In this document: positions 18,217 through 64,000 of the stretch, piece after piece
Position numbering within the stretch: the first letter of the stretch is position 1
How the letters are laid out: every line of letters starts with the position of its first letter
Assembly (NCBI RefSeq): GCF_023055435.1
Contig: NW_025964334.1
Location: forward strand, 10,602,001 to 10,666,000
From: Haliotis rufescens
Taxonomy: Eukaryota
Reading direction: 5' to 3'
Length of the DNA stretch: 64,000 nucleotides
The notes under the pieces: generated by a model
Databases searched by the model: none
Told to the model about the DNA's origin: nothing
What the model saw: the letters and a program-made list of their open reading frames with translations, nothing else
Made by a program: the position numbers and the translations under genes

Positions 18217-18491
18217 GGGACGCAAGAGTGCATTAAGAAATTCGGTCCTCTCGGCCACACCTGTCAACGATGAAAATGAACGGAAATATATTTGATAATG
18301 TTGAAATATTGTATTCTCTGGAAAAGTCGCAATTCAGATTAAATAACAGTTCCTGTAATATGATAATACACGTTCTTGCAGGTATTGTATCTGATTCATT
18401 GTTACAACATAAACGGTCACCTTGTAAGCAAGGTGAAAATGTTAAACTTAAACAGGTTCATATTTTCTGCCAATATTGTTTAATGAACATA

Positions 18492-18494
<3 letters not shown>
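18217..18494. repeat. Diverged truncated relic of the array unit (matches 19112-19408)
   Basis: Colinear with the unit from GGACGCAAG to GAACATAGTA. It has many substitutions and one short deletion. Confidence 0.88.

Positions 18495-18572
<78 letters not shown>
18493..18572. repeat. (TA)~40 microsatellite at the array boundary
   Basis: Read directly from the sequence. Confidence 0.95.
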
Positions 18573-18575
<3 letters not shown>

Positions 18576-18964
18576 CCCATGCTGTATAGCTTGTAATGGA
18601 TTGGCATCAACATAAGACATGGGCTTGTTTGCCAATCCAGTTGGATTTCAAGAAATAACTTTGTTTCAACTACTCTTAACTAAGCATTAACATCCAGCCT
18701 AATGAAGGCTTTAACTTTCCACAGTTTCTAATTATGGTTACATGCACGCTCACAAAAAATCTTATGTGTTGTATTGTCTCATTCGAACGGGTGAAATATC
18801 AAAGTTCATTGCAATTTACATGTGAGACATACATCACACCTAATTATATACAAATGAGCTAATGACATTAACATGCGTGTTCAAGTTCTTTTGATGAAGG
18901 AAGCTCTTTGCGCGCAGGTACAATTGGCACCAACATGTTCTTTATTTATAAGTTTAATATGCAG

Positions 18965-19155
18965 TATATCATGTAAATGTGGGAGGAAAGCCGATAATGG
19001 TGCACAACTTTGGTGAAACCGATGTGCAGGGTTTATTGCTGGCAAACTGAGAATCATAATCAGAGTGGATCTAGTTTCAAACCAACAACCATAGGATTCT
19101 TGGCCATCTAAAGGACGCAAGTGTGCATTAAGAAATGCGGCGCTCTAGGCCACAC
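18965..19155 (-). mobile_element. Decayed SINE family 2 copy carried in every array unit
   Basis: AATGTGGGAGGAAAGCC...GGTGAAACC...AAAGGACGCAAGTGTGCA...GCGGCGCTCTAG matches, in order, blocks of 868-1070. Confidence 0.65.
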
Positions 19156-19808
19156 CTGTCAACGTTGAAAATGAACGGAAACATATTTTGTATTGTTGAA
19201 CTATTTTATTTTCTGGCAAAATCGCAATTCAGATAAAATCGCAGTTCCAGGAATGCTCAGTGTAATCTATTATATGATAATACACGTTCTTGCAGGTATT
19301 GTATCTGTTTCATTGTTACAACATGAACGGTCACCTTGCGAGCAAGGTGAAAATGTTAAACTTAAACAGGTTCATATTTTCTGCCAATATTGTTTAATGA
19401 ACATAGTAATGCATAACTTGTGTCGCGATGTTTACACACAAGCACACTGACACTGACAAGTAACATTAGTACAATGACACTGTTAAGCACGTGTCGGTAT
19501 GCTTTGTTCCTTCACATAAACAACAACGTACAATGTGCAAGTCAAGCATCATGTCTGACAATGCTATCGTCTTCACACAGAGAGTGTCTTGATGACTTTA
19601 TCTTCGTCTTCGTCAACCCCAACCTTGTGACGCTCTAAACGTTATGGGACTGAGCGACAGTGACTGATGTCTTCTTCTTGGCGTCGTCTTCGTCGTCTTG
19701 GACAACAGGCTTGCTGCTGTTGGTTCATCCTCTTGTTGGGGAACTGTGAGTATAGTGTGGATATTGATCCTACTGTTTGGAACCTTCTTGTAAGTTCGGT
19801 TGATCTTT

Positions 19809-21301
19809 TCATCTGGTTACACCTGGCAGCTGGAAGAGAGTAAATTTGCAAAAATTAGAACCGCAGTAGAGAGTATTTAATCATGTAATATTCGAAGTTT
19901 TTTTTGCAGTCAAAATTTATCAATCACATTAAGAATCATTTGGGTCCTTGAAATGTTTCCCAACGAAATCAATTAATTTTAGAATGCGTGTGGCCCAAGT
20001 GAGATCATGGCCAAGAGAACCTGAAGGAGAGTATGTTACATACCTGACAGACGAGCTTCTGTGCTGGTCGTTTGTTTTGGTAGGTCCAGGCTAAATCCAG
20101 AAGGGCTGGACCATGTCCCTGATTTTGACATCTCTGGACAAACTGCATACAGGCCGTTTGTAGGTCGGAGAATCCAAATTCCACAGATGCACAGAGTAAT
20201 CCTGAAAGAGCCGAGGACGTATTGTAATGTGTTTGATAAAATATCATCAAAAGGGTGAAGTTCATATTATGGATAATTGTCTGTGTTTCGCTCATGTGTC
20301 ATCAAGATTAGTGGTATGGGGATATTTTTGTGTTGAAATGAATATCCCATTTAAACAAATAAAGATAGTACTTACCAACCACATTGTTAAAATCGATGTT
20401 AGCTTTCCCTGAGTGGACGAATTTGAGGAACGCCCGAAAGTCTCCAATCTGGTAGTCAGGAATGCTGATGGTGAGTTTCTGTGCAAAGGCTGAGTCTTTG
20501 ATCTTTTTGGTCTTTGATCGTTCCAAGGAGGAGTGTTTCTGATGTTGAAGCAAAAGCTGATATAGGTACCTAGAGAAAAGAAAGAAACAAATTAAAGACG
20601 ATAGTCATACACAACTAGTAAATGGTCCAAATATTGTTCTCATGTTGAGTACATTCACAGAGTATAAGAGCCAAACAGGCTCTACTTAAACATGCACTTA
20701 TTATTGTCCTGACCTTTGTAATGGATTTGATTGTTTTCGAGAATATCTTACCTGCTTCGTGTAGCCATTATGGCTTTGACTCCATGAACAGGAGCCTTCT
20801 CCTTCCCAACGAGAAAGGTGACGTCACACATATCTGGCATGTTGAGGATGAGGGAGAGGCTGTCCTGTAAGTCCCCTGTGCTTCTAAGCATCATGACGTC
20901 TCCCCGACCGGAGGACTGTGAGGGGTGAGAGCGGCCTTGTGATGGGTTGGAACTGGATTGGCTGAACGATCTTGATTTTGAGGTCGTGCTCACGCCTTCA
21001 TCAGAGGAGTAGTCACTTGAGTCATAGCCTGACGAGGTACCTTCAGCTGGAATAAGAAAAGAAATCAGTTATGAAACAATATTCAATTTGTTGCAAATGT
21101 TATTAAAGCTGAGTGGTGTTTGATGAACAGAACGGGTAGTTGAAATATACTTTGAATAAAAACAACACCAATGAATTATTATCCAGATGTGATAAAAGTG
21201 AATAGTGCAAATGTCTCACCGTCTGCGTCATGACCACTGTGGTCAATAGTTTCCATGGCCGAAGAGGCCAGAAGACAAAGTCGGGAATCGTAATGATTCA
21301 T
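19809..21301 (-). CDS. BTB/POZ-domain protein, serine-enriched-protein-like, ~249 aa; copy 1
   Basis: Exons 21301-21220, 21046-20752, 20569-20376, 20201-20044 and 19829-19809. All introns are GT-AG with pyrimidine tracts and phases 1,2,1,0. BTB motifs: MCDVTFLVG...VHGVKAIMATRSRYLYQL...ISIPDY...FLKFVHSG...VVGLLCASVEFGFSDLQTACMQFV. The last exon is the least certain. Confidence 0.88.
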
Positions 21302-21410
21302 GTTACTTGTTTTTAGATCTAAAAAATAATGAAAGACAGAAATGATATTTGGCTAAACTCGACGAATCTAAAGAGCTAAGTATGTATCTCGATGTAATGT
21401 TTCCAAGAGT

Positions 21411-21592
21411 GGAATGCCTTCTTCCTGTAACAGAACAGCTTTATACCTTTGCGTATCACAACACAAATGACAGGGTCATTACTACAACTACATGTCACGA
21501 TTAATTCAATGTTGACATGAAGGCTTCAGCTTAGCACATTTAGCTAGTGGCACGTGCTGCACTTGTGAATGAGATGACATCACGTGACCAAT
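21411..21592 (-). promoter_or_regulatory. Core and proximal promoter of the BTB gene (repeated in each unit)
   Basis: TATAAAG at 21445-21439. An initiator-like GCATTC has its A at 21415, 30 nt downstream. CACGTG at 21551-21556 and 21581-21586, TGACATCA at 21575-21582, CCAAT at 21588-21592. Confidence 0.7.
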
Positions 21593-23698
21593 CTAGTAAG
21601 TGTTCTACGGTAATGTCGTTTGTTGTCAAAACATCGACATAATATAATTAGGATGATAATGTGTTTCAGGTGTTTGATTATTTAAGGATTTACGATATCC
21701 GTGTTCATTTGCCGGTGTTAATTGGTATCTTGTTATAAAGCATCCATTTGTACACAAGTTAGATTTGATATGAGTGGAACTTTTAGATGCCCGTGATGTA
21801 GATGTAGTTACAGAATGTTGGTGGAATTATACACTATCTATCTGTATAAGTATGTGAAAATTACTTGCACTTGAAATATACATGTTTAGCGTTATAGTTT
21901 CCACTGACTGAAGACAGTCATTGTGATTTCCTTATTGATATATAATTGAACTAACATAGTTCTGTTATTGAATTGTGTATAAACATAACTGATAGTTTTT
22001 TGTTTCAATTTTCCCAAGTGCAAGGGTGACAACACAAAGTTAGAGTGTCAAATGTTGAAAGAGGGTGTTTTTTTTTCTGGTGTGTGTATATGACACCCCG
22101 CTGTTTCCTTACAATTTGTGTCAGCCAAAGTCAATTCACCGTGTCACTCTTCAGGCAAAGAGTTTGCTAAACTGAACTTTATTGTACTCGGGATTACTCG
22201 TGACACATGACCGCATGATTTGAAACTGAGCGGAGGCACAACGATTTGTTGAGTAGAGGGCTTGGCTATAGATGATATACTCAGCGATGTGTATTTGTTT
22301 AATCATAACGGAATGTGTGATTGTACGGTTGCTGATAGATGTTGTAGACAGGCTAGTCAAGTGGTACATGTTTGCGTTTGAATTGACTGGCAATCAAGGC
22401 AGTTTGAGAAACAAACTTGCAACATATAACTAGAACCTTTGCGCTCACTGCTTCTGCACTTATATCCCATGCTGTATAGCTTGTAATGGATTGGCATCAA
22501 CATAAGACATGGGCTTGTTTGCCAATCCAGTTGGATTTCAAGAAATAACTTTGTTTCAACTACTCTTAACTAAGCATTAACATCCAGCCTAATGAAGGCT
22601 TTAACTTTCCACAGTTTCTAATTATGGTTACATGCACGCTCACAAAAAATCTTATGTGTTGTATTGTCTCATTCGAACGGGTGAAATATCAAAGTTCATT
22701 GCAATTTACATGTGAGACATACATCACACCTAATTATATACAAATGAGCTAATGACATTAACATGCGTGTTCAAGTTCTTTTGATGAAGGAAGCTCTTTG
22801 CGCGCAGGTACAATTGGCACCAACATGTTCTTTATTTATAAGTTTAATATGCAGTATATCATGTAAATGTGGGAGGAAAGCCGATAATGGTGCACAACTT
22901 TGGTGAAACCGATGTGCAGGGTTTATTGCTGGCAAACTGAGAAACATAATCAGAGTGGATCTAGTTTCAAACCAACAACCATAGGATTCTTGGCCATCTA
23001 AAGGACGCAAGTGTGCATTAAGAAATGCGGCGCTCTAGGCCACACCTGTCAACGTTGAAAATGAACGGAAACATATTTTGTATTGTTGAACTATTTTATT
23101 TTCTGGCAAAATCGCAATTCAGATAAAATCGCAGTTCCAGGAATGCTCAGTGTAATCTATTATATGATAATACACGTTCTTGCAGGTATTGTATCTGATT
23201 CATTGTTACAACATGAACGGTCACCTTGCGAGCAAGGTGAAAATGTTAAACTTAAACAGGTTCATATTTTCTGCCAATATTGTTTAATGAACATAGTAAT
23301 GCATAACTTGTGTCGCGATGTTTACACACAAGCACACTGACACTGACAAGTAACATTAGTACAATGACACTGTTAAGTACGTGTCGGTATGCTTTGTTCC
23401 TTCACACAAACAACAACGTACAATGTGCAAGTCAAGCATCATGTCTGACAATGCTATCGTCTTCACACAGAGAGTATCTTGATGACTTTATCTTCGTCTT
23501 CGTCAACCCCAACCTTGTGACGCTCTAAACGTTATGGGACTGAGCGACAGTGACTGATGTCTTCTTCTTGGCGTCGTCTTCGTCGTCTTGGACAACAGGC
23601 TTGCTGCTGTTGGTTCATCCTCTTGTTGGGGAACTGTGAGTATAGTGTGGATATTGATCCTACTGTTTGGAACCTTCTTGTAAGTTCGGTTGATCTTT

Positions 23699-25192
23699 TC
23701 ATCTGGTTACACCTGACAGCTGGAAAAAGAGTAAATTTGCAAAAATTAGAACCGCAGTAGAGAGTATTTAATCATGTAATATTCGAAGTTTTTTTTGCAG
23801 TCAAAATTTATCAATCACATTAAGAATCATTTGGGTCCTTGAAATGTTTCCCAACGAAATCAATTAATTTTAGAATGCGTGTGGCCCAAGTGAGATCATG
23901 GCCAAGAGAACCTGAAGGAGAGTATGTTACATACCTGACAGACGAGCTTCTGTGCTGGTCGTTTGTTTTGGTAGGTCCAGGCTAAATCCAGAAGGGCTGG
24001 ACCATGTCCCTGATTTTGACATCTCTGGACAAACTGCATACAGGCCGTTTGTAGGTCGGAGAATCCAAATTCCACAGATGCACAGAGTAATCCTGAAAGA
24101 GCCGAGGACGTATTGTAATTTGTTTGATAAAATATCATCAAAAGGGTGAAGTTCATATTATGGATAATTGTCTGTGTTTCACTCATGTGTCATCAAGATT
24201 AGTGGTATGGGGATATTTTTGTGTTGAAATGAATATCCCATTTAAACAAATAAAGATAGTACTTACCAACCACATTGTTAAAATCGATGTTAGCTTTCCC
24301 TGAGTGGACGAATTTGAGGAACGCCCGAAAGTCTCCAATCTGGTAGTCAGGAATGCTGATGGTGAGTTTCTGTGCAAAGGCTGAGTCTTTGATCTTTTTG
24401 GTCTTTGATCGTTCCAAGGAGGAGTGTTTCTGATGTTGAAGCAAAAGCTGATATAGGTACCTAGAGAAAAGAAAGAAAGAAATTAAAGACGATAGTCATA
24501 CACAACTAGTAAATGGTCCAAATATTGTTCTCATGTTGAGTACATTCACAGAGTATAAGAGCCAAACAGGCTCTACTTAAACATGCACTTATTATTGTCC
24601 TGACCTTTGTAATGGATTTGATTGTTTTCGAGAATATCTTACCTGCTTCGTGTAGCCATTATGGCTTTGACTCCATGAACAGGAGCCTTCTCCTTCCCAA
24701 CGAGAAAGGTGACGTCACACATATCTGGCATGTTGAGGATGAGGGAGAGGCTGTCCTGTAAGTCCCCTGTGCTTCTAAGCATCATGACGTCTCCCCGACC
24801 GGAGGACTGTGAGGGGTGAGAGCGGCCTTGTGATGGGTTGGAACTGGATTGGCTGAACGATCTTGATTTTGAGGTCGTGCTCACGCCTTCATCAGAGGAG
24901 TAGTCGCTTGAGTCATAGCCTGACGAGGTACCTTCAGCTGGAATAAGAAAAGAAATCAGTTATGAAACAATATTCAATTTGTTGCAAATGTTATTAAAGC
25001 TGAGTGGTGTTTGATGAACAGAACGGGTAGTTGAAATATACTTTGAATAAAAACAACACCAATGAATTATTATCCTGATGTGATAAAAGTGAATAGTGCA
25101 AATGTCTCACCGTCTGCGTCATGACCACTGTGGTCAATAGTTTCCATGGCCGAAGAGGCCAGAAGACAAAGTCGGGAATCGTAATGATTCAT
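23699..25192 (-). CDS. BTB/POZ-domain protein, copy 2
   Basis: Same five exons and splice sites as copy 1; frame intact. Confidence 0.87.
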
Positions 25193-27589
25193 GTTACTTG
25201 TTTTTAGATGTAAAAAATAATGAAAGACAGAAATGATATTTGGCTAAACTCGACGAATCTAAAGAGCTAAGTATGTATCTCGATGTAATGTTTCCAAGAG
25301 TGGAATGCCTTCTTCCTGTAACAGAACAGCTTTATACCTTTGCGTATCACAACACAAATGACAGGGTCATTATTACAACTACATGTCACGATTAATTCAA
25401 TGTTGACATGAAGGCTTCAGCTTAGCACATTTAGCTAGTGGCACGTGCTGCACTTGTGAATGAGATGACATCACGTGACCAATCTAGTAAGTGTTCTACG
25501 GTAATGTCGTTTGTTGTCAAAACATCGACATAATATAATTAGGATGATAATGTGTTTCAGGTGTTTGATTATTTAAGGATTTACGATATCCGTGTTCATT
25601 TGCCGGTGTTAATTGGTATCTTGTTATAAAGCATCCATTTGTACACAAGTTAGATTTGATATGAGTGGAACTTTTAGATGCCCGTGATGTAGATGTAGTT
25701 ACAGAATGTTGGTGGAATTATACACTATCTATCTGTATAAGTATGTGAAAATTACTTGCACTTGAAATATACATGTTTAGCGTTATAGTTTCCACTGACT
25801 GAAGACAGTCATTGTGATTTCCTTATTGATATATAATTGAACTAACATAGTTCTGTTATTGAATTGTGTATAAACATAACTGATAGTTTTTTGTTTCAAT
25901 TTTCCCAAGTGCAAGGGTGACAACACAAAGTTAGAGTGTCAAATGTTGAAAGAGGGTGTTTTTTTTTCTGGTGTGTGTATATGACACCCCGCTGTTTCCT
26001 TACAATTTGTGTCAGCCAAAGTCAATTCACCGTGTCACTCTTCAGGCAAAGAGTTTGCTAAACTGAACTTTATTGTACTCGGGATTACTCGTGACACATG
26101 ACCGCATGATTTGAAACTGAGCGGAGGCACAACGATTTGTTGAGTAGAGGGCTTGGCTATAGATGATATACTCAGCGATGTGTATTTGTTTAATCATAAC
26201 GGAATGTGTGATTGTACGGTTGCTGATAGATGTTGTAGACAGGCTAGTCAAGTGGTACATGTTTGCGTTTGAATTGACTGGCAATCAAGGCAGTTTGAGA
26301 AACAAACTTGCAACATATAACTAGAACCTTTGCGCTCACTGCTTCTGCACTTATATCCCATGCTGTATAGCTTGTAATGGATTGGCATCAACATAAGACA
26401 TGGGCTTGTTTGCCAATCCAGTTGGATTTCAAGAAATAACTTTGTTTCAACTACTCTTAACTAAGCATTAACATCAAGCCTAATGAAGGCTTTAACTTTC
26501 CACAGTTTCTAATTATGGTTACATGCACGCTCACAAAAAATCTTATGTGTTGTATTGTCTCATTCGAACGGGTGAAATATCAAAGTTCATTGCAATTTAC
26601 ATGTGAGACATACATCACACCTAATTATATACAAATGAGCTAATGACATTAACATGCGTGTTCAAGTTCTTTTGATGAAGGAAGCTCTTTGCGCGCAGGT
26701 ACAATTGGCACCAACATGTTCTTTATTTATAAGTTTAATATGCAGTATATCATGTAAATGTGGGAGGAAAGCCGATAATGGTGCACAACTTTGGTGAAAC
26801 CGATGTGCAGGGTTTATTGCTGGCAAACTGAGAAACATAATCAGAGTGGATCTAGTTTCAAACCAACAACCATAGGATTCTTGGCCATCTAAAGGACGCA
26901 AGTGTGCATTAAGAAATGCGGCGCTCTAGGCCACACCTGTCAACGTTGAAAATGAACGGAAACATATTTTGTATTGTTGAACTATTTTATTTTCTGGCAA
27001 AATCGCAATTCAGATAAAATCGCAGTTCCAGGAATGCTCAGTGTAATCTATTATATGATAATACACGTTCTTGCAGGTATTGTATCTGATTCATTGTTAC
27101 AACATGAACGGTCACCTTGCGAGCAAGGTGAAAATGTTAAACTTAAACAGGTTCATATTTTCTGCCAATATTGTTTAATGAACATAGTAATGCATAACTT
27201 GTGTCGCGATGTTTACACACAAGCACACTGACACTGACAAGTAACATTAGTACAATGACACTGTTAAGTACGTGTCGGTATGCTTTGTTCCTTCACACAA
27301 ACAACAACGTACAATGTGCAAGTCAAGCATCATGTCTGACAATGCTATCGTCTTCACACAGAGAGTAGCTTGATGACTTTATCTTCGTCTTCGTCAACCC
27401 CAACCTTGTGACGCTCTAAACGTTATGGGACTGAGCGACAGTGACTGATGTCTTCTTCTTGGCGTCGTCTTCGTCGTCTTGGACAACAGGCTTGCTGCTG
27501 TTGGTTCATCCTCTTGTTGGGGAACTGTGAGTATAGTGTGGATATTGATCCTACTGTTTGGAACCTTCTTGTAAGTTCGGTTGATCTTT

Positions 27590-29083
27590 TCATCTGGTTA
27601 CACCTGACAGCTGGAAAAAGAGTAAATTTGCAAAAATTAGAACCGCAGTAGAGAGTATTTAATCATGTAATATTCGAAGTTTTTTTTGCAGTCAAAATTT
27701 ATCAATCACATTAAGAATCATTTGGGTCCTTGAAATGTTTCCCAACGAAATCAATTAATTTTAGAATGCGTGTGGCCCAAGTGAGATCATGGCCAAGAGA
27801 ACCTGAAGGAGAGTATGTTACATACCTGACAGACGAGCTTCTGTGCTGGTCGTTTGTTTTGGTAGGTCCAGGCTAAATCCAGAAGGGCTGGACCATGTCC
27901 CTGATTTTGACATCTCTGGACAAACTGCATACAGGCCGTTTGTAGGTCGGAGAATCCAAATTCCACAGATGCACAGAGTAATCCTGAAAGAGCCGAGGAC
28001 GTATTGTAATTTGTTTGATAAAATATCATCAAAAGGGTGAAGTTCATATTATGGATAATTGTCTGTGTTTCACTCATGTGTCATCAAGATTAGTGGTATG
28101 GGGATATTTTTGTGTTGAAATGAATATCCCATTTAAACAAATAAAGATAGTACTTACCAACCACATTGTTAAAATCGATGTTAGCTTTCCCTGAGTGGAC
28201 GAATTTGAGGAACGCCCGAAAGTCTCCAATCTGGTAGTCAGGAATGCTGATGGTGAGTTTCTGTGCAAAGGCTGAGTCTTTGATCTTTTTGGTCTTTGAT
28301 CGTTCCAAGGAGGAGTGTTTCTGATGTTGAAGCAAAAGCTGATATAGGTACCTAGAGAAAAGAAAGAAAGAAATTAAAGACGATAGTCATACACAACTAG
28401 TAAATGGTCCAAATATTGTTCTCATGTTGAGTACATTCACAGAGTATAAGAGCCAAACAGGCTCTACTTAAACATGCACTTATTATTGTCCTGACCTTTG
28501 TAATGGATTTGATTGTTTTCGAGAATATCTTACCTGCTTCGTGTAGCCATTATGGCTTTGACTCCATGAACAGGAGCCTTCTCCTTCCCAACGAGAAAGG
28601 TGACGTCACACATATCTGGCATGTTGAGGATGAGGGAGAGGCTGTCCTGTAAGTCCCCTGTGCTTCTAAGCATCATGACGTCTCCCCGACCGGAGGACTG
28701 TGAGGGGTGAGAGCGGCCTTGTGATGGGTTGGAACTGGATTGGCTGAACGATCTTGATTTTGAGGTCGTGCTCACGCCTTCATCAGAGGAGTAGTCACTT
28801 GAGTCATAGCCTGACGAGGTACCTTCAGCTGGAATAAGAAAAGAAATCAGTTATGAAACAATATTCAATTTGTTGCAAATGTTATTAAAGCTGAGTGGTG
28901 TTTGATGAACAGAACGGGTAGTTGAAATATACTTTGAATAAAAACAACACCAATGAATTATTATCCAGATGTGATAAAAGTGAATAGTGCAAATGTCTCA
29001 CCGTCTGCGTCATGACCACTGTGGTCAATAGTTTCCATGGCCGAAGAGGCCAGAAGACAAAGTCGGGAATCGTAATGATTCAT
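27590..29083 (-). CDS. BTB/POZ-domain protein, copy 3
   Basis: Same structure; frame intact. Confidence 0.87.
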
Positions 29084-52428: not shown

Positions 52429-54824
52429 GTTACTTGTTTTTAGATCTAAATAATAATGAAAGACAGAAATGATATTTGGCTAAACTCGACGAATCTAAAG
52501 AGCTAAGTATGTATCTCGATGTAATGTTTCCAAGAGTGGAATGCCTTCTTCCTGTAACAGAACAGCTTTATACCTTTGCGTATCACAACACAAATTACAG
52601 GGTCATTATTACAACTACATGTCACGATTAATTCAATGTTGACATGAAGGCTTCAGCTTAGCACATTTAGCTAGTGGCACGTGCTGCACTTGTGAATGAG
52701 ATGACATCACGTGACCAATCTAGTAAGTGTTCTACGGTAATGTCGTTTGTTGTCAAAACATCGACATAATATAATTAGGATGATAATGTGTTTCAGGTGT
52801 TTGATTATTTAAGGATTTACGATATCCGTGTTCATTTGCCGGTGTTAATTGGTATCTTGTTATAAAGCATCCATTTGTACACAAGTTAGATTTGATATGA
52901 GTGGAACTTTTAGATGCCCGTGATGTAGATGTAGTTACAGAATGTTGGTGGAATTATACACTATCTATCTGTATAAATATGTGAAACTTACTTGCACTTG
53001 AAATATACATGTTTAGCGTTATAGTTTCCACTGACTGAAGACAGTCATTGTAATTTCCTTATTGATATATAATTGAACTAAAATAGTTCTGTTATTGAAT
53101 TGTGTATAAACATAACTGATAGTTTTTTGTTTCAATTTTCCCAATTGCAAGTGTGACAACACAAAGTTAGAGTGTCAAATGTTGAAAGAGAGTGTTTTTT
53201 TTCTGGTGTGTGTATATGACACCCCGCTGTTTCCTTACAATTTGTGTTAGCCAAAGTCAATTCACCGTGTCACTCTTCAGGCAAAGAGTTTGCTAAACTG
53301 AACTTTATTGTACTCGGGATTACTCGTGACACATGACCGCATGATTTGAAACTGAGCGGAGGCGCAACGATTTGTTGAGTAGAGGGCTTGGCTATAGATG
53401 ATATACTCAGCGATGTGTATTTGTTTAATCATAACGGAATGTGTGATTGTACGGTTGCTGATAGATGTTGTAGACAGGCTAGTCAAGTGGTACATGTTTG
53501 CGTTTGAATTGACTGGCAATCAAGGCAGTTTGAGAAACAAACTTGCAACATATAACTAGAACCTTTGCGCTCACTGCTTCTGCACTTATATCCCATGCTG
53601 TATAGCTTGTAATGGATTGGCATCAACATAAGACATGGGCTTGTTTGCCAATCCAGTTGGATTTCAAGAAATAACTTTGTTTCAACTACTCTTAACTAAG
53701 CATTAACATCCAGCCTAATGAAGGCTTTAACTTTCCACAGTTTCTAATTATGGTTACATGCACGCTCACAAAAAATCTTATGTGTTGTATTGTCTCATTC
53801 GAACGGGTGAAATATCAAAGTTCATTGCAATTTACATGTGAGACATACATCACACCTAATTATATACAAATGAGCTAATGACATTAACATGCGTGTTCAA
53901 GTTCTTTTGATGAAGGAAGCTCTTTGCGCGCAGGTACAATTGGCACCAACATGTTCTTTATTTATAAGTTTAATATGCAGTATATCATGTAAATGTGGGA
54001 GGAAAGCCGATAATGGTGCACAACTTTGGTGAAACCGATGTGCAGGGTTTATTGCTGGCAAACTGAGAATCATAATCAGAGTGGATCTAGTTTCAAACCA
54101 ACAACCATAGGATTCTTGACCATCTAAAGGACGCAAGTGTGCATTAAGAAATGCGGCGCTCTAGGCCACACCTGTCAACGTTGAAAATGAACGGAAACAT
54201 ATTTTGTATATTTGAACTATTTTATTTTCTGGCAAAATCGCAATTCAGATAAAATCGCAGTTCCAGGAATGCTCAGTGTAATCTATTATATGATAATACA
54301 CGTTCTTGCAGGTATTGTATCTGTTTCATTGTTACAACTTGAACGGTCACCTTGCGAGCAAGGTGAAAATGTTAAACTTAAACAGGTTCATATTTTCTGC
54401 CAATATTGTTTAATGAACATAGTAATGCATAACTTGTGTCGCGATGTTTACACACAAGCACACTGACACTGACAAGTAACATTAGTACAATGACACTGTT
54501 AAGCACGTGTCGGTATGCTTTGTTCCTTCACACAAACAACAACGTACAATGTGCAAGTCAAGCATCATGTCTGACAATGCTATCGTCTTCACACAGAGAG
54601 TGTCTTGATGACTTTATCTTCGTCTTCGTCAACCCCAACCTTGTGGCGCTCTAAACGTTATGGGACTGAGCGACAGTGACTGATGTCTTCTTCTTGGCGT
54701 CGTCTTCGTCGTCTTGGACAACAGGCTTGCTGCTGTTGGTTCATCCTCTTGTTGGGGAACTGTGAGTATAGTGTGGATATTGATCCTACTGTTTGGAACC
54801 TTCTTGTAAGTTCGGTTGATCTTT

Positions 54825-56318
54825 TCATCTGGTTACACCTGACAGCTGGAAGAGAGTAAATTTGCAAAAATTAGAACCGCAGTAGAGAGTATTTAATCAT
54901 GTAATATTCGAAGTTTTTTTTGCAGTCAAAATTTATCAATCACATTAAGAATCATTTGGGTCCTTGAAATGTTTCCCAACGAAATCAATTATATTTTAGA
55001 ATGCGTGTGGCCCAAGTGAGATCATGGCCAAGAGAACCTGAAGGAGAGTATGTTACATACCTGACAGACGAGCTTCTGTGCTGGTCGTTTGTTTTGGTAG
55101 GTCCAGGCTAAATCCAGAAGGGCTGGACCATGTCCCTGATTTTGACATCTCTGGACAAACTGCATACAGGCCGTTTGTAGGTCGGAGAATCCAAATTCCA
55201 CAGATGCACAGAGTAATCCTGAAAGAGCCGAGGACGTATTGTAATGTGTTTGATAAAATATCATCAAAAGGGTGAAGTTCATATTATGGATAATTGTCTG
55301 TGTTTCGCTCATGTGTCATCAAGATTAGTGGTATGGGGATATTTTTGTGTTGAAATGAATATCCCATTTAAACAAATAAAGATAGTACTTACCAACCACA
55401 TTGTTAAAATCGATGTTAGCTTTCCCTGAGTGGACGAATTTGAGGAACGCCCGAAAGTCTCCAATCTGGTAGTCAGGAATGCTGATGGTGAGTTTCTGTG
55501 CAAAGGCTGAGTCTTTGATCTTTTTGGTCTTTGATCGTTCCAAGGAGGAGTGTTTCTGATGTTGAAGCAAAAGCTGATATAGGTACCTAGAGAAAAGAAA
55601 GAAACAAATTAAAGACGATAGTCATACACAACTAGTAAATGGTCCAAATATTGTTCTCATGTTGAGTACATTCACAGAGTATAAGAGCCAAACAGGCTCT
55701 ACTTAAACATGCACTTATTATTGTCCTGACCTTTGTAATGGATTTGATTGTTTTCGAGAATATCTTACCTGCTTCGTGTAGCCATTATGGCTTTGACTCC
55801 ATGAACAGGAGCCTTCTCCTTCCCAACGAGAAAGGTGACGTCACACATATCTGGCATGTTGAGGATGAGGGAGAGGCTGTCCTGTAAGTCCCCTGTGCTT
55901 CTAAGCATCATGACGTCTCCCCGACCGGAGGACTGTGAGGGGTGAGAGCGGCCTTGTGATGGGTTGGAACTGGATTGGCTGAACGATCTTGATTTTGAGG
56001 TCGTGCTCACGCCTTCATCAGAGGAGTAGTCGCTTGAGTCATAGCCTGACGAGGTACCTTCAGCTGGAATAAGAAAAGAAATCAGTTATGAAACAATATT
56101 CAATTTGTTGCAAATGTTATTAAAGCTGAGTGGTGTTTGATGAACAGAACGGGTAGTTGAAATATACTTTGAATAAAAACAACACCAATGAATTATTATC
56201 CTGATGTGATAAAAGTGAATAGTGCAAATGTCTCACCGTCTGCGTCATGACCACTGTGGTCAATAGTTTCCATGGCCGAAGAGGCCAGAAGACAAAGTCG
56301 GGAATCGTAATGATTCAT
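54825..56318 (-). CDS. BTB/POZ-domain protein, copy 10
   Basis: Same structure; frame intact. Confidence 0.87.
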
Positions 56319-58714
56319 GTTACTTGTTTTTAGATCTAAATAATAATGAAAGACAGAAATGATATTTGGCTAAACTCGACGAATCTAAAGAGCTAAGTAT
56401 GTATCTCGATGTAATGTTTCCAAGAGTGGAATGCCTTCTTCCTGTAACAGAACAGCTTTATACCTTTGCGTATCACAACACAAATTACAGGGTCATTATT
56501 ACAACTACATGTCACGATTAATTCAATGTTGACATGAAGGCTTCAGCTTAGCACATTTAGCTAGTGGCACGTGCTGCACTTGTGAATGAGATGACATCAC
56601 GTGACCAATCTAGTAAGTGTTCTACGGTAATGTCGTTTGTTGTCAAAACATCGACATAATATAATTAGGATGATAATGTGTTTCAGGTGTTTGATTATTT
56701 AAGGATTTACGATATCCGTGTTCATTTGCCGGTGTTAATTGGTATCTTGTTATAAAGCATCCATTTGTACACAAGTTAGATTTGATATGAGTGGAACTTT
56801 TAGATGCCCGTGATGTAGATGTAGTTACAGAATGTTGGTGGAATTATACACTATCTATCTGTATAAATATGTGAAACTTACTTGCACTTGAAATATACAT
56901 GTTTAGCGTTATAGTTTCCACTGACTGAAGACAGTCATTGTAATTTCCTTATTGATATATAATTGAACTAAAATAGTTCTGTTATTGAATTGTGTATAAA
57001 CATAACTGATAGTTTTTTGTTTCAATTTTCCCAATTGCAAGTGTGACAACACAAAGTTAGAGTGTCAAATGTTGAAAGAGAGTGTTTTTTTTCTGGTGTG
57101 TGTATATGACACCCCGCTGTTTCCTTACAATTTGTGTTAGCCAAAGTCAATTCACCGTGTCACTCTTCAGGCAAAGAGTTTGCTAAACTGAACTTTATTG
57201 TACTCGGGATTACTCGTGACACATGACCGCATGATTTGAAACTGAGCGGAGGCGCAACGATTTGTTGAGTAGAGGGCTTGGCTATAGATGATATACTCAG
57301 CGATGTGTATTTGTTTAATCATAACGGAATGTGTGATTGTACGGTTGCTGATAGATGTTGTAGACAGGCTAGTCAAGTGGTACATGTTTGCGTTTGAATT
57401 GACTGGCAATCAAGGCAGTTTGAGAAACAAACTTGCAACATATAACTAGAACCTTTGCGCTCACTGCTTCTGCACTTATATCCCATGCTGTATAGCTTGT
57501 AATGGATTGGCATCAACATAAGACATGGGCTTGTTTGCCAATCCAGTTGGATTTCAAGAAATAACTTTGTTTCAACTACTCTTAACTAAGCATTAACATC
57601 CAGCCTAATGAAGGCTTTAACTTTCCACAGTTTCTAATTATGGTTACATGCACGCTCACAAAAAATCTTATGTGTTGTATTGTCTCATTCGAACGGGTGA
57701 AATATCAAAGTTCATTGCAATTTACATGTGAGACATACATCACACCTAATTATATACAAATGAGCTAATGACATTAACATGCGTGTTCAAGTTCTTTTGA
57801 TGAAGGAAGCTCTTTGCGCGCAGGTACAATTGGCACCAACATGTTCTTTATTTATAAGTTTAATATGCAGTATATCATGTAAATGTGGGAGGAAAGCCGA
57901 TAATGGTGCACAACTTTGGTGAAACCGATGTGCAGGGTTTATTGCTGGCAAACTGAGAATCATAATCAGAGTGGATCTAGTTTCAAACCAACAACCATAG
58001 GATTCTTGACCATCTAAAGGACGCAAGTGTGCATTAAGAAATGCGGCGCTCTAGGCCACACCTGTCAACGTTGAAAATGAACGGAAACATATTTTGTATA
58101 TTTGAACTATTTTATTTTCTGGCAAAATCGCAATTCAGATAAAATCGCAGTTCCAGGAATGCTCAGTGTAATCTATTATATGATAATACACGTTCTTGCA
58201 GGTATTGTATCTGTTTCATTGTTACAACTTGAACGGTCACCTTGCGAGCAAGGTGAAAATGTTAAACTTAAACAGGTTCATATTTTCTGCCAATATTGTT
58301 TAATGAACATAGTAATGCATAACTTGTGTCGCGATGTTTACACACAAGCACACTGACACTGACAAGTAACATTAGTACAATGACACTGTTAAGCACGTGT
58401 CGGTATGCTTTGTTCCTTCACACAAACAACAACGTACAATGTGCAAGTCAAGCATCATGTCTGACAATGCTATCGTCTTCACACAGAGAGTGTCTTGATG
58501 ACTTTATCTTCGTCTTCGTCAACCCCAACCTTGTGGCGCTCTAAACGTTATGGGACTGAGCGACAGTGACTGATGTCTTCTTCTTGGCGTCGTCTTCGTC
58601 GTCTTGGACAACAGGCTTGCTGCTGTTGGTTCATCCTCTTGTTGGGGAACTGTGAGTATAGTGTGGATATTGATCCTACTGTTTGGAACCTTCTTGTAAG
58701 TTCGGTTGATCTTT

Positions 58715-60207
58715 TCATCTGGTTACACCTGACAGCTGGAAGAGAGTAAATTTGCAAAAATTAGAACCGCAGTAGAGAGTATTTAATCATGTAATATTCG
58801 AAGTTTTTTTTGCAGTCAAAATTTATCAATCACATTAAGAATCATTTGGGTCCTTGAAATGTTTCCCAACGAAATCAATTAATTTTAGAATGCGTGTGGC
58901 CCAAGTGAGATCATGGCCAAGAGAACCTGAAGGAGAGTATGTTACATACCTGACAGACGAGCTTCTGTGCTGGTCGTTTGTTTTGGTAGGTCCAGGCTAA
59001 ATCCAGAAGGGCTGGACCATGTCCCTGATTTTGACATCTCTGGACAAACTGCATACAGGCCGTTTGTAGGTCGGAGAATCCAAATTCCACAGATGCACAG
59101 AGTAATCCTGAAAGAGCCGAGGACGTATTGTAATGTGTTTGATAAAATATCATCAAAAGGGTGAAGTTCATATTATGGATAATTGTCTGTGTTTCGCTCA
59201 TGTGTCATCAAGATAAGTGGTATGGGGATATTTTTGTGTTGAAATGAATATCCCATTTAAACAAATAAAGATAGTACTTACCAACCACATTGTTAAAATC
59301 GATGTTAGCTTTCCCTGAGTGGACGAATTTGAGGAACGCCCGAAAGTCTCCAATCTGGTAGTCAGGAATGCTGATGGTGAGTTTCTGTGCAAAGGCTGAG
59401 TCTTTGATCTTTTTGGTCTTTGATCGTTCAAAGGAGGAGTGTTTCTGATGTTGAAGCAAAAGCTGATATAGGTACCTAGAGAAAAGAAAGAAACAAATTA
59501 AAGACGATAGTCATACACAACTAGTAAATGGTCCAAATATTGTTCTCATGTTGAGTACATTCACAGAGTATAAGAGCCAAACAGGCTCTACTTAAACATG
59601 CACTTATTATTGTCCTGACCTTTGTAATGGATTTGATTGTTTTCGAGAATATCTTACCTGCTTCGTGTAGCCATTATGGCTTTGACTCCATGAACAGGAG
59701 CCTTCTCCTTCCCAACGAGAAAGGTGACGTCACACATATCTGGCATGTTGAGGATGAGGGAGAGGCTGTCCTGTAAGTCCCCTGTGCTTCTAAGCATCAT
59801 GACGTCTCCCCGACCGGAGGACTGTGAGGGGTGAGAGCGGCCTTGTGATGGGTTGGAACTGGATTGGCTGAACGATCTTGATTTTGAGGTCGTGCTCACG
59901 CCTTCATCAGAGGAGTAGTCGCTTGAGTCATAGCCTGACGAGGTACCTTCAGCTGGAATAAGAAAAGAAATCAGTTATGAAACAATATTCAATTTGTTGC
60001 AAATGTTATTAAAGCTGAGTGGTGTTTGATGAACAGAACGGGTAGTTGAAATATACTTTGAATAAAAACAACACCAATGAATTATTATCCTGATGTGATA
60101 AAAGTGAATAGTGCAAATGTCTCACCGTCTGCGTCATGACCACTGTGGTCAATAGTTTCCATGGCCGAAGAGGCCAGAAGACAAAGTCGGGAATCGTAAT
60201 GATTCAT
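58715..60207 (-). CDS. BTB/POZ-domain protein, copy 11 (L>F in SSLER)
   Basis: Same structure; one missense change in exon 3. Confidence 0.87.
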
Positions 60208-62603
60208 GTTACTTGTTTTTAGATCTAAATAATAATGAAAGACAGAAATGATATTTGGCTAAACTCGACGAATCTAAAGAGCTAAGTATGTATCTCGATG
60301 TAATGTTTCCAAGAGTGGAATGCCTTCTTCCTGTAACAGAACAGCTTTATACCTTTGCGTATCACAACACAAATTACAGGGTCATTATTACAACTACATG
60401 TCACGATTAATTCAATGTTGACATGAAGGCTTCAGCTTAGCACATTTAGCTAGTGGCACGTGCTGCACTTGTGAATGAGATGACATCACGTGACCAATCT
60501 AGTAAGTGTTCTACGTTAATGTCGTTTGTTGTCAAAACATCGACATAATATAATTAGGATGATAATGTGTTTCAGGTGTTTGATTATTTAAGGATTTACG
60601 ATATCCGTGTTCATTTGCCGGTGTTAATTGGTATCTTGTTATAAAGCATCCATTTGTACACAAGTTAGATTTGATATGAGTGGAACTTTTAGATGCCCGT
60701 GATGTAGATGTAGTTACAGAATGTTGGTGGAATTATACACTATCTATCTGTATAAATATGTGAAACTTACTTGCACTTGAAATATACATGTTTAGCGTTA
60801 TAGTTTCCACTGACTGAAGACAGTCATTGTAATTTCCTTATTGATATATAATTGAACTAAAATAGCACTGTTATTGAATTGTGTATAAACATAACTGATA
60901 GTTTTTGTTTCAATTTTCCCAATTGCAAGTGTGACAACACAAAGTTAGAGTGTCAAATGTTGAAAGAGAGCGGTTTTTTTTCTGGTGTGTGTATATGACA
61001 CCCTGCTGTTTCCTTACAATTTGTGTTAGCCAAAGTCAATTCACCGTGTCACTCTTCAGGCAAAGAGTTTGCTAAACTGAACTTTATTGTACTCGGGATT
61101 ACTCGTGACACATGACCGCATGATTTGAAACTGAGCGGAGGCGCAACGATTTGTTGAGTAGAGGGCTTGGCTATAGATGATATACTCAGCGATGTGTATT
61201 TGTTTAATCATAACGGAATGTGTGATTGTACGGTTGCTGATAGATGTTGTAGACAGGCTAGTCAAGTGGTACATGTTTGCGTTTGAATTGACTGGCAATC
61301 AAGGCAGTTTGAGAAACAAACTTGCAACATACAACTAGAACCTTTGCGCTCACTGCTTCTGCACTTATATCCCATGCTGTATAGCTTGTAATGGATTGGC
61401 ATCAACATAAGACATGGGCTTGTTTGCCAATCCAGTTGGATTTCAAGAAATAACTTTGTTTCAACTACTCTTAACTAAGCATTAACATCAAGCCTAATGA
61501 AGGCTTTAACTTTCCACAGTTTCTAATTATGGTTACATGCACGCTCACAAAAAATCTTATGTGTTGTATTGTCTCATTCGAACGGGTGAAATATCAAAGT
61601 TCATTGCAATTTACATGTGAGACATACATCACACCTAATTATATACAAATGAGCTAATGACATTAACATGCGTGTTCAAGTTCTTTTGATGAAGGAAGCT
61701 CTTTGCGCGCAGGTACAATTGGCACCAACATGTTCTTTATTTATAAGTTTAATATGCAGTATATCATGTAAATGTGGGAGGAAAGCCGATAATGGTGCGC
61801 AACTTTGGTGAAACCGATGTGCAGGGTTTATTGCTGGCAAACTGAGAATCATAATCAGAGTGGATCTAGTTTCAAACCAACAACCATAGGATTCTTGGCC
61901 ATCTAAAGGACGCAAGTGTGCATTAAGAAATGCGGCGCTCTAGGCCACACCTGTCAACGTTGAAAATGAACGGAAACATATTTTGTATTGTTGAACTATT
62001 TTATTTTCTGGCAAAATCGCAATTCAGATAAAATCGCAGTTCCAGGAATGCTCAGTGTAATCTATTATATGATAATACACGTTCTTGCAGGCATTGTATC
62101 TGATTCATTGTTACAACATGAACGGTCACCTTGCGAGCAAGGTGAAAATGTTAAACTTAAACAGGTTCATATTTTCTGCCAATATTGTTTAATGAACATA
62201 GTAATGCATAACTTGTGTCGCGATGTTTACACACAAGCACACTGACACTGACAAGTAACATTAGTACAATGACACTGTTAAGTACGTGTCGGTATGCTTT
62301 GTTCCTTCACACAAACAACAACGTACAATGTGCAAGTCAAGCATCATGTCTGACAATGCTATCGTCTTCACACAGAGAGTGTCTTGATGACTTTATCTTC
62401 GTCTTCGTCAACCCCAACCTTGTGACGCTCTAAACGTTATGGGACTGAGCGACAGTGACTGATGTCTTCTTCTTGGCGTCGTCTTCGTCGTCTTTGACAA
62501 CAGGCTTGCTGCTGTTGGTTCATCCTCTTGTTGGGGAACTGTGAGTATAGTGTGGATATTGATCCTACTGTTTGGAACCTTCTTGTAAGTTCGGTTGATC
62601 TTT

Positions 62604-63841
62604 TCATCTGGTTACACCTGACAGCTGGAAGAGAGTAAATTTGCAAAAATTAGAACCGCAGTAGAGAGTATTTAATCATGTAATATTCGAAGTTTTTTTT
62701 GCAGTCAAAATTTATCAATCACATTAAGAATCATTTGGGTCCTTGAAATGTTTCCCAACGAAATCAATTAATTTTAGAATGCGTGTGGCCCAAGTGAGAT
62801 CATGGCCAAGAGAACCTGAAGGAGAGTATGTTACATACCTGACAGACGAGCTTCTGTGCTGGTCGTTTGTTTTGGTAGGTCCAGGCTAAATCCAGAAGGG
62901 CTGGACCATGTCCCTGATTTTGACATCTCTGGACAAACTGCATACAGGCCGTTTGTAAGTCGGAGAATCCAAATTCCACAGATGCACAGAGTAATCCTGA
63001 AAGAGCCGAGGACGTATTGTAATTTGTTTGATAAAATATCATCAAAAGGGTGAAGTTCATATTATGGATAATTGTCTGTGTTTCGCTCATGTGTCATCAA
63101 GATTAGTGGTATGGGGATATTTTTGTGTTGAAATGAATATCCCATTTAAACAAATAAAGATAGTACTTACCAACCACATTGTTAAAATCGATGTTAGCTT
63201 TCCCTGAGTGGACGAATTTGAGGAACGCCCGAAAGTCTCCAATCTGGTAGTCAGGAATGCTGATGGTGAGTTTCTGTGCAAAGGCTGAGTCTTTGATCTT
63301 TTTGGTCTTTGATCGTTCCAAGGAGGAGTGTTTCTGATGTTGAAGCAAAAGCTGATATAGGTACCTAGAGAAAAGAAAGAAACAAATTAAAGACGATAGT
63401 CATACACAACTAGTAAATGGTCCAAATATTGTTCTCATGTTGAGTACATTCACAGAGTATAAGAGCCAAACAGGCTCTACTTAAACATGCACTTATTATT
63501 GTCCTGACCTTTGTAATGGATTTGATTGTTTTCGAGAATATCTTACCTGCTTCGTGTAGCCATTATGGCTTTGACTCCATGAACAGGAGCCTTCTCCTTC
63601 CCAACGAGAAAGGTGACGTCACACATATCTGGCATGTTGAGGATGAGGGAGAGGCTGTCCTGTAAGTCCCCTGTGCTTCTAAGCATCATGACGTCTCCCC
63701 GACCGGAGGACTGTGAGGGGTGAGAGCGGCCTTGTGATGGGTTGGAACTGGATTGGCTGAACGATCTTGATTTTGAGGTCGTGCTCACGCCTTCATCAGA
63801 GGAGTAGTCGCTTGAGTCATAGCCTGACGAGGTACCTTCAG
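62604..63841 (-). CDS. BTB/POZ-domain protein, copy 12 (exons 2-5; exon 1 lies beyond the window)
   Basis: Exons 2-5 are intact; the window ends in intron 1. Confidence 0.82.
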
Positions 63842-64000
63842 CTGGAATAAGAAAAGAAATCAGTTATGAAACAATATTCAATTTGTTGCAAATGTTATTA
63901 AAGCTGAGTGGTGTTTGATGAACAGAACGGGTAGTTGAAATATACTTTGAATAAAAACAACACCAATGAATTATTATCCTGATGTGATAAAAGTGAATAG

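What the first reader, a model, noticed from the sequence alone, without database searches (positions are those of the whole stretch)
18574..64000. Macrosatellite that is really a gene array: at least 12 near-identical, intact copies of a spliced BTB/POZ gene
Seen: each ~3,890 bp unit holds a full transcription unit with TATA/Inr, five coding exons, GT-AG introns and downstream AATAAA candidates (e.g. TTTATT at 19205 and 18941). I found no stop, frameshift or coding splice-site loss in any copy. Known: homogeneous tandem arrays are typical of high-dosage products such as rDNA, histones and snRNAs, or of special cases like DUX4/D4Z4 and ampliconic genes. They are not typical of BTB adaptor genes. 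Inference: this is a recent dosage amplification, or a selfish or conflict-driven amplicon, of a regulatory protein, and may be copy-number variable. A repeat masker would probably hide it as a satellite.
Basis: partly seen in the sequence, partly recalled or inferred. Interest (0 to 1): 0.9.

Follow-up and report, generated by a model that had tools for sequence, protein, structure and literature searches.

The report
Expressed BTB gene tandem array, red abalone
A 58-kb stretch of red abalone DNA that looks like a satellite is a head-to-tail array of 15 nearly identical, intact, spliced genes for a small BTB-domain protein; it is the youngest block of a large mollusc gene family that repeatedly forms such arrays, and the public annotation already calls these genes.

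Summary
From window 18571 to the window's end, a 3,889-3,892 bp unit repeats 11.7 times at 99.2-100% identity. Each unit carries one minus-strand, five-exon gene with GT-AG introns, a conserved TATAAA and a conserved AATAAA. Eleven copies are complete and intact. The twelfth lacks only exon 1, which lies just past the window. Three more copies follow, giving 15.

The contig is Haliotis rufescens. RefSeq already annotates the copies as "serine-enriched protein-like". Transcriptome contigs from two related organism labels confirm three introns exactly and the fourth by a loose end.

The protein is a disordered Ser/Asp-rich N-terminus, a BTB domain (Pfam E 4e-14) and two 3-box-like helices. No substrate-binding domain was found.

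The array sits in a layered cluster of about 33 family loci (~200 kb). Two more clusters lie elsewhere in the genome. dN/dS against the older neighbouring array is 0.34, so the coding sequence is constrained. All H. cracherodii copies share six residues that differ from all H. rufescens copies, so the arrays were homogenised or re-amplified after the species split.

This is a young tandem gene expansion of a known kind. A conflict origin, copy-number variation and biochemical function remain untested.

The parts
18571..64000 (-). Array A inside the window: 11.7 units of 3,889-3,892 bp, 99.2-100% identical. It continues to about contig 10,678,000 (about 14 kb beyond the window); 15 genes in all.
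19600..23490 (-). Reference unit (copy 1), phased so that the gene lies inside it.
21220..21301 (-). Copy 1 exon 1. The ATG is at 21301. The N-terminal motif it encodes is conserved in mollusc homologues. RefSeq starts at the second Met (codon 16).
   Evidence: RNA contig covering 21238-21383
20752..21046 (-). Copy 1 exon 2: SSGYDSSD motif, Ser-rich linker and the start of the BTB domain.
   Evidence: the junction with exon 1 is supported by the loose end at 21047
20376..20569 (-). Copy 1 exon 3: middle of the BTB domain with a Lys-rich loop.
   Evidence: joints at 20569|20752 and 20201|20376 in runs X15 and X18
20044..20201 (-). Copy 1 exon 4: end of the BTB domain plus two 3-box-like helices.
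19809..19829 (-). Copy 1 exon 5 coding part (6 codons plus stop). The 3' UTR runs on to about 19200.
   Evidence: joint 19829|20044 in X15; H. asinina model P0154 ends the same way
19642..19743 (-). Alternative last coding exon used by the RefSeq models (acceptor at 19743, 33 codons, Arg-rich tail). None of the three RNA-contig runs laid here shows a joint to it.
21440..21445 (-). TATAAA box about 140 nt upstream of the ATG. RNA contigs reach 21383, and the depth bins from 21420 up to 21679 are empty.
19205..19210 (-). AATAAA signal. RNA coverage of the 3' UTR ends at the equivalent position in the unit (23092 corresponds to 19202).
23699..25192 (-). Copy 2 CDS span, intact.
27590..29083 (-). 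Copy 3 CDS span, intact.
31481..32974 (-). Copy 4 CDS span, intact (A207V).
35372..36864 (-). Copy 5 CDS span, intact (L244P).
39261..40754 (-). Copy 6 CDS span, intact.
43152..44645 (-). Copy 7 CDS span, intact.
47043..48537 (-). Copy 8 CDS span, intact.
50934..52428 (-). Copy 9 CDS span, intact.
54825..56318 (-). Copy 10 CDS span, intact.
58715..60207 (-). Copy 11 CDS span, intact (L141F).
62604..63841 (-). Copy 12, exons 5-2. Exon 1 lies beyond the window's end.
22866..23033 (.). Fragment of a dispersed repeat inside the intergenic part of the unit. It matches many contigs of the genome at 70-81%.
   Evidence: query positions 448-627 of the minus-oriented unit
18214..18494 (-). Degenerate fragment of a unit (86% identity) just outside the left edge of the array.

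Best explanation
This is a young tandem gene array in Haliotis rufescens that evolves in concert.

Shown: 15 head-to-tail copies of a 3.89-kb unit. Each unit holds one intact, TATA-driven, five-exon gene that is transcribed and spliced. The gene encodes a ~249-aa protein of the mollusc 'serine-enriched protein-like' BTB family. The protein has a disordered Ser/Asp-rich N-terminus with a conserved SSGY[DE]S motif, a BTB domain with a Lys-rich loop, and two 3-box-like helices. No substrate-binding domain was found.

Inferred: the array arose and is kept homogeneous by unequal crossing-over or gene conversion within a much older tandem cluster of the same family. Its effect is dosage of one protein, not diversity. 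The protein probably self-associates through its BTB domain. It then acts either as a minimal Cul3-binding module, whose partners are recruited by the disordered N-terminus, or as a nuclear BTB scaffold or decoy for other BTB proteins.
For: Array and intact ORFs.

Species and existing gene models.

Transcription and splicing. Joints lie at 19829|20044, 20201|20376 and 20569|20752. X18 contigs are 99-100% identical to the window; X15 contigs are 90-99% alike with high word depth. The loose end at 21047 matches the end of exon 1. Coverage is essentially limited to exons and UTRs, with two low-depth patches in the intergenic part.

Protein: BTB at E 4.3e-14. The AF2 model has pLDDT above 90 over most of residues 81-230 (lower in the 131-140 loop), with disordered ends. 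The best structural matches are SPOP BTB/3-box, ZBTB8A, KEAP1 and KLHL11.

Constraint: dN/dS of array A against array B is 0.34 at dS 0.13, and 0.10-0.17 against the older paralogues. Variable sites among 11 units are 5/750 in CDS, 9/745 in introns and 53/2399 in intergenic sequence.

Homogenisation: six residues are fixed differently between all H. cracherodii and all H. rufescens copies. Unit distances are structured by neighbourhood, and the edge unit is the most diverged.

Family habit: array B (4.75-kb period) and about 10 older paralogues lie next door. A second regular array lies on contig C334 and a cluster on C412. H. asinina and Mya arenaria have runs of >=90%-identical genes with consecutive accession numbers.
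Against: - In the one run laid for the organism label that holds the window best (X19), only two low-depth, unspliced pieces were seen. Spliced expression in H. rufescens itself rests on the near-identical X18 contigs and on the RefSeq models.
- Copy number was not checked against read depth.
- Species-specific homogenisation was judged from proteins only. The DNA of the sister species could not be fetched.
- I could not see the usual phi-x-E Cul3 contact motif in the Lys-rich loop between helix 3 and strand 4.
- No interaction could be predicted. The complex tool was unreachable.
- Within array A, 4 of the 5 coding variants are non-synonymous. That is too few to show selection on each copy.
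Confidence: 0.75

Rival explanations
1. Assembly artefact: a single or low-copy gene was over-expanded by the assembler into a false array.
For: No read-depth or long-read test could be run here. The DNA runs are kept only as contigs, which cannot give copy number.
Against: - The units are not identical. Pairs differ by 3-59 positions, in a neighbour-structured pattern with a diverged edge unit.
- The independent H. cracherodii assembly carries at least nine gene models in the same >=90% cluster (XP_071100593, -595 to -599, -601) on one contig.
- Some of those models join exon 4 to sequence that corresponds, in the window, to the start of the next copy. That fits a head-to-tail arrangement.
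- Fourteen runs from the ten listed studies hold at least half (0.78-0.88) of the unit's sampled words.
Confidence: 0.04
2. Neutral recent segmental amplification. The copies are transcribed because each carries its promoter, but the copy number is not selected. The extra copies are on their way to decay or loss.
For: Within-array coding variants are mostly non-synonymous (4 of 5). The pairwise within-array omega is about 0.85, from very few changes. Broken or partial family members exist nearby: loci 17/18 are split, 27-29 are partial, and locus 31 has a stop in exon 4.
Against: All 15 copies keep an intact ORF, splice sites, TATA and poly(A) signal. Variable sites are about three times rarer in CDS than in intergenic sequence. 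The family shows purifying selection between arrays. Arrays of this family recur in other clusters and species.
Confidence: 0.15
3. Conflict-driven or selfish amplicon: a dosage arms race with a pathogen, a meiotic driver or a sex-linked ampliconic gene.
For: There is fast turnover or homogenisation since the split from H. cracherodii and repeated independent arrays in the family. In exon 3, which holds the Lys-rich loop, dN is about equal to dS between arrays A and B. Other expanded BTB families are linked to adaptation in the literature on lineage-specific expansions (PMC1257465).
Against: Overall dN/dS is 0.34 and the copies are near-identical, so there is no diversification of a recognition surface. 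No substrate-binding domain exists to diversify. No reads from the array were laid in the one miRNA-Seq run tried, which the tool itself calls no test. There are no data on sex linkage or drive.
Confidence: 0.08

Closest known systems
Lineage-specific expansions of BTB genes (MATH-BTB in C. elegans and grasses; Skp1-like genes), as surveyed in PMC1257465 and PMC4091423
   Same: A BTB protein family is multiplied in one lineage, largely by local duplication. The structural type of the BTB domain is the one used by Cul3 adaptors.
   Different: Those families carry a MATH or other substrate-binding domain and have diverged copies. Here there is no such domain, and the youngest 15 copies are 99-100% identical, so the array adds dosage rather than diversity.
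Rodent TD-POZ (Tdpoz/Rtdpoz) gene cluster (PMC2724483)
   Same: A cluster of many closely related BTB (POZ) genes with co-transcription and chimeric transcripts between neighbouring copies. Gene models in H. cracherodii likewise join one copy to the next.
   Different: The rat genes are TRAF/MATH-POZ retrogenes embedded in transposon relics. The abalone genes keep four introns, lack MATH and sit in a regular 3.89-kb array.
Macrosatellite gene arrays such as D4Z4/DUX4, and classical dosage arrays (histone, rDNA, snRNA) (my own knowledge, not tested here)
   Same: Kilobase-scale units, each with a complete transcription unit, head-to-tail, kept homogeneous within a species.
   Different: The product here is a BTB protein, not a transcription factor or a structural RNA or protein. 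The array is flanked by progressively older paralogous arrays of the same family. Epigenetic silencing and copy-number polymorphism were not examined.
SPOP BTB/3-box module (PDB 3htm, 3hqi), KEAP1 and KLHL11 BTB domains
   Same: These are the best structural matches of the predicted fold, including helices after the BTB core.
   Different: Only 12-20% sequence identity. There is no MATH, BACK or Kelch domain. The helix 3-strand 4 loop, which contacts Cul3 in those proteins, is replaced by a 20-25-residue Lys-rich insertion.

Membership tests
BTB/POZ domain proteins (Pfam PF00651) | Significant match to the BTB profile above the gathering score | tested here: met
   P0171 is identical to residues 16-243 of the window's model. 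It scores E 4.3e-14, 53.1 bits against a cut-off of 20.5, over residues 84-199. Single exons alone fall below the cut-off.
BTB/POZ domain proteins (Pfam PF00651) | BTB fold | tested here: met
   The AF2 model has pLDDT above 90 over most of residues 81-230. Foldseek probability is 1.00 to SPOP, KEAP1, ZBTB8A, BTBD6 and PLZF BTB domains.
Mollusc 'serine-enriched protein-like / GPRS-like' small BTB family (name given by automatic annotation) | Sequence homology along the whole short protein, including the N-terminal SSGY[DE]S motif | tested here: met
   Exon 2 finds 183 relatives at E<=1e-3. Named members come from Haliotis, Mya, Mercenaria, Pecten, Saccostrea and Solemya. The motif and the BTB domain align in most of the ~26 short forms.
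Cul3 substrate adaptors (BTB + 3-box + substrate-binding domain) | Helical 3-box directly after the BTB core | tested here: inconclusive
   Two confident helices (206-214 and 220-228) follow the BTB domain in the model. The best matches include SPOP BTB/3-box. No residue-level comparison with a solved 3-box was made.
Cul3 substrate adaptors (BTB + 3-box + substrate-binding domain) | phi-x-E Cul3-contact motif in the helix 3-strand 4 loop | tested here: inconclusive
   By eye, the family alignment shows a variable Lys-rich insertion there and no conserved phi-x-E. No alignment to a solved adaptor was done, because no referenced sequence was at hand.
Cul3 substrate adaptors (BTB + 3-box + substrate-binding domain) | A separate substrate-recognition domain (MATH, Kelch, zinc finger and others) | tested here: not met
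   Pfam finds only BTB. Residues 1-60 and 231-261 are predicted disordered.
Cul3 substrate adaptors (BTB + 3-box + substrate-binding domain) | Physical binding to Cul3 | not testable with these tools
   No referenced abalone Cul3 sequence was available. Complex prediction was unreachable even for the homodimer.
BTB-BACK(-Kelch) proteins | BACK domain (PF07707) after the BTB domain | tested here: not met
   BACK is found in the 400-500-aa relatives P0059, P0062 and P0101, but not in P0171, P0154 or P0004.
Concertedly evolving tandem gene array (macrosatellite-type) | Head-to-tail units of constant length, each with a complete gene | tested here: met
Concertedly evolving tandem gene array (macrosatellite-type) | Copies more alike within a species than between species | tested here: met
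   At the protein level, six positions are fixed differently in all H. cracherodii versus all H. rufescens copies. Outgroup paralogues show derived states on both sides. The DNA-level test was not possible.
Concertedly evolving tandem gene array (macrosatellite-type) | Copy-number polymorphism between individuals | not tested

The most novel reading that the evidence does not exclude
The mollusc 'serine-enriched protein-like' BTB+3-box-only family may be a dedicated burst-dosage gene family. Its short, TATA-driven genes would be repeatedly and independently amplified into homogeneous arrays: three clusters in H. rufescens and further runs in H. cracherodii, H. asinina and Mya arenaria. The purpose would be to deliver a pulse of one small BTB protein at a particular stage, for example early development or gametogenesis, as with Dux, Tdpoz or early-histone arrays. 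The protein would act as a decoy or minimal partner of Cul3 through its conserved SSGY[DE]S tail.
Probability: 0.15. Interest if true: 0.6.

Novelty: new member of a known kind. Interest (0 to 1): 0.35.

Why it matters
The finding shows that a block which looks like a 3.9-kb satellite is 15 working copies of one regulatory-type gene. The array belongs to a layered series of arrays of different ages, so it is a clean natural case for studying how tandem gene arrays are born, homogenised and decay, and for asking why one small BTB family is amplified again and again in molluscs. For abalone genetics, it flags a locus that short-read mapping and expression counting will mishandle. The copies are near-identical, so reads multi-map, and gene models can chain neighbouring copies.

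Tried and rejected
- TRF with a longest period of 500 did not see the array. K-mer spacing and BLAST did.
- Pfam on single exons gave only sub-threshold BTB hits.
- A PDB sequence search gave only a weak ZBTB8A hit, E 0.0097.
- Rfam on 1-24000 found nothing.
- The miRNA-Seq raw-read run X21 laid no reads on the unit. The tool itself says this is no test.
I used the proteins instead.
The arrays on C334 and C412 are therefore described only from search coordinates.
- Complex prediction for a BTB homodimer was unreachable four times: no verdict.
- No BTB-BACK 'parent' gene with close similarity was found in the genome. P0062's BACK part matches only distant intronless ORFs at 22-25%. I therefore dropped the idea that the array gene is a recent truncation. 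Short forms are old and widespread in molluscs.
- Full-text searches found no paper on this family or array in abalone.
Full report

Yes. Exact 25-mer self-matches in the window pile up at spacings of 3,889-3,892 bp. BLAST of one unit against the window gives eleven full-length matches and two partial ones that tile 18571-64000 at 99.15-100% identity. Tandem Repeats Finder did not report the array only because its longest period is 500 bp. The only runs of N lie far to the left (10699-16488) and were left alone.

**2. The gene.**

Each unit carries one gene on the minus strand. In copy 1 the exons are 21301-21220, 21046-20752, 20569-20376, 20201-20044 and 19829-19809.

All eleven complete copies keep the ORF, the single terminal stop and GT/AG at every junction. 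They differ at four amino-acid positions only. Copy 12 has exons 2-5 in the window with at most one base change each. Its exon 1 lies 16-96 bp beyond the window's end.

A TATAAA box (21445-21440) and an AATAAA signal (19210-19205) are present, and their contexts are exactly conserved in all units.

Exon 2 was searched by reference, and database proteins were used by id.

**3. Where it comes from and what is already known.**

The window is contig C556:10,602,001-10,666,000 of a 1.33-Gb genome. A search with exon 2, followed by a search with its best hit, found named proteins on a contig of exactly the same length (61,478,412 bp). They are 'serine-enriched protein-like [Haliotis rufescens]', XP_048241896 to XP_048241908, and a further paralogue, XP_048241912. 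So the organism is the red abalone, and RefSeq already calls these copies as genes.

- It starts at the second Met.
- It uses another last-exon acceptor at 19743, which gives an Arg-rich 33-residue tail.

The first Met is the better start. The N-terminal motif it adds is conserved in homologues from other molluscs and is used in the H. cracherodii models. An RNA contig also covers it.

**4. Is it expressed and spliced?**

One read-laying run was available. I used three runs guessed to be RNA, kept as contigs, and one miRNA-Seq run.

- Run X15 (organism label C, contigs 90-99% alike) shows depth essentially only over the exons, the 5' UTR up to 21383 and a 3' UTR of about 600 nt. That UTR ends at the unit position equivalent to 19202, at the AATAAA. 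Most of the intergenic 2.4 kb is empty.
- The joints are 19829|20044, 20201|20376 and 20569|20752, all GT..AG on the minus strand.
- Run X18 (label B) shows introns 3 and 2 in contigs that are 99-100% identical to the window.
- Intron 1 is supported by a 16-nt loose end at 21047 that equals the end of exon 1.
- No joint to the RefSeq acceptor was seen.
- Run X19 (label A, the label of the best DNA holders) gave only two low-depth, unspliced pieces on the gene. Direct evidence in that label is therefore thin.
- The small-RNA run laid nothing, which the tool says is no test.

**5. The protein.**

P0171 hits Pfam BTB at E 4.3e-14 and nothing else. Longer relatives of 400-500 aa also have a BACK domain, but the short forms do not.

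An AlphaFold model built on a 35-sequence family alignment is confident (pLDDT above 90) over most of residues 81-230. That region covers a leading strand, the BTB core and two further helices. Residues 1-60 and 231-261 are disordered. Foldseek places the model with SPOP BTB/3-box, ZBTB8A, KEAP1, KLHL11 and BTBD6.

The family alignment shows two features outside the core:
- a conserved SSGY[DE]S motif in the acidic, Ser-rich N-terminus of the short forms;
- a variable Lys-rich insertion in the loop that contacts Cul3 in known adaptors. I could not see the usual phi-x-E motif there.

So 'BTB-only protein with a 3-box-like extension' is shown. 'Cul3 adaptor' is an inference with real doubt. A nuclear scaffold or decoy role is equally open.

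**6. The neighbourhood changes the picture.**

I fetched 200 kb around the window and mapped the exon peptides on it. This gave 33 family loci on the contig between 10.62 and 10.81 Mb:
- Array A has 15 genes at 98-100% amino-acid identity.
- One transitional copy follows.
- Array B has four full copies with a 4.75-kb period (about 87% DNA identity to A), plus a split copy.
- About ten older paralogues follow at 46-67% identity. Some are partial, and one has a stop in exon 4.

A tree puts A next to the transitional copy and B, then the older clade.

Genome-wide searches find two more clusters. One is a regular array of at least nine copies spaced 4.46-4.86 kb on C334 (two gaps differ, one of them 6.7 kb). 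The other is six copies on C412.

In other species, >=90%-identical family genes with consecutive accession numbers sit on one contig in H. asinina (XP_067687030-39) and Mya arenaria (WAQ94851-59). Array formation is therefore a habit of this family, not a singular event.

**7. How it evolves.**

Among 11 full units, variable sites number 5 of 750 in CDS, 9 of 745 in introns and 53 of 2,399 in intergenic DNA.

Pairwise unit differences are 3-59 per unit. Near neighbours are the most alike (for example u9/u10 and u12/u13 differ at 3 sites), there are two blocks, and the last regular unit is the most diverged. By my own knowledge of tandem repeats, this is the pattern expected from unequal exchange.

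Nei-Gojobori estimates give dN/dS 0.34 at dS 0.13 between arrays A and B, and 0.10-0.17 against the older paralogues, where dS is saturated. Only exon 3, which holds the Lys-rich loop, is near 1. The coding sequence is thus under purifying selection, and there is no sign of diversifying selection.

All H. cracherodii gene models in the same 90% cluster share six residues that differ from all H. rufescens copies. More distant paralogues show that each species carries derived states. So the copies were homogenised, or amplified anew, after the two species split.

Several H. cracherodii models end in peptides that the window encodes at the start of the next copy: at the acceptor at 21424, or at exon 2 read in another frame. 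These models chain neighbouring copies. That fits head-to-tail order in that species and suggests read-through transcripts or an annotation artefact.

**8. Comparison with what is known.**

Lineage-specific expansions of BTB families are textbook material, for example MATH-BTB in nematodes and grasses and Skp1-like genes (PMC1257465, PMC4091423). Rodents have a TD-POZ cluster with co-transcribed neighbours (PMC2724483).

What differs here is the lack of any substrate-binding domain, the intron-containing regular unit and the near-identity of the youngest copies. Full-text searches found no paper on this family or array in abalone.

I class it as a new member of a known kind.

**9. What remains open.**

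Still open are copy number by read depth, variation between individuals and sexes, the tissue or stage of expression, which last exon dominates in H. rufescens, and any biochemical partner. The complex predictor could not be reached.

Noticed in passing
window 6806-9339: G-rich 34-bp minisatellite of about 75 copies, 86% matches, strong GC skew (~0.5). It produces long spurious repeat ORFs on the minus strand.
   Followed up: partly
window 10900-13100 and 13263-13963: A unit of about 925-936 bp repeated three times at 99-100%. Each unit holds a (CTA)n-like microsatellite and a masked N stretch of about 145-170 bp. A longer (CTA)n tract of 700 bp follows. The masked letters were left alone.
   Followed up: partly
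window 14330-15433 (+): An intact 367-aa ORF with DDE_3 and Tc3-type HTH transposase domains: a Tc1/mariner-like transposon about 3 kb left of the array's edge.
   Followed up: partly
contig C556:10,686,000-10,718,800 (loci L001-L012, L015-L018): Older sister array B of the same gene: 4.75-kb period, four full copies plus a transitional copy. One further copy has exon 4 lying 4.5 kb away from exons 1-3. About 87% DNA identity to array A, with a 7-codon deletion in the Ser-rich part of exon 2.
   Followed up: partly
contig C556:10,721,000-10,814,000 (L018-L027): About ten further paralogues at 46-67% amino-acid identity. They include a young sub-clade spaced about 7.5-8 kb, partial copies, one copy with a stop in exon 4 and one copy on the opposite strand.
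   Followed up: partly
contig C334:40,576,000-40,617,000 and C412:849,000-903,000: Two more clusters of the family. C334 is a regular array of at least nine copies, mostly spaced 4.46-4.86 kb, with near-identical scores. C412 has six copies spaced 8-15 kb.
   Followed up: no
window 19743 versus 19829, and 21301 versus 21256: The RefSeq models of H. rufescens start at the second Met and use a different last-exon acceptor from the one seen in the RNA contigs. The public models probably mis-state both ends of the protein.
   Followed up: yes
window 21424 and 21046 (each unit): H. cracherodii RefSeq models end in peptides encoded at the 5' UTR/exon 1 region, or at exon 2 (other frame), of the next copy downstream. 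The gene models or transcripts therefore chain neighbouring array copies.
   Followed up: partly
proteins P0019 cluster (H. asinina) and P0011 cluster (Mya arenaria): Runs of >=90%-identical (some fully identical) family proteins with consecutive accession numbers on single contigs in other molluscs. This suggests independent homogeneous arrays of other family members.
   Followed up: no
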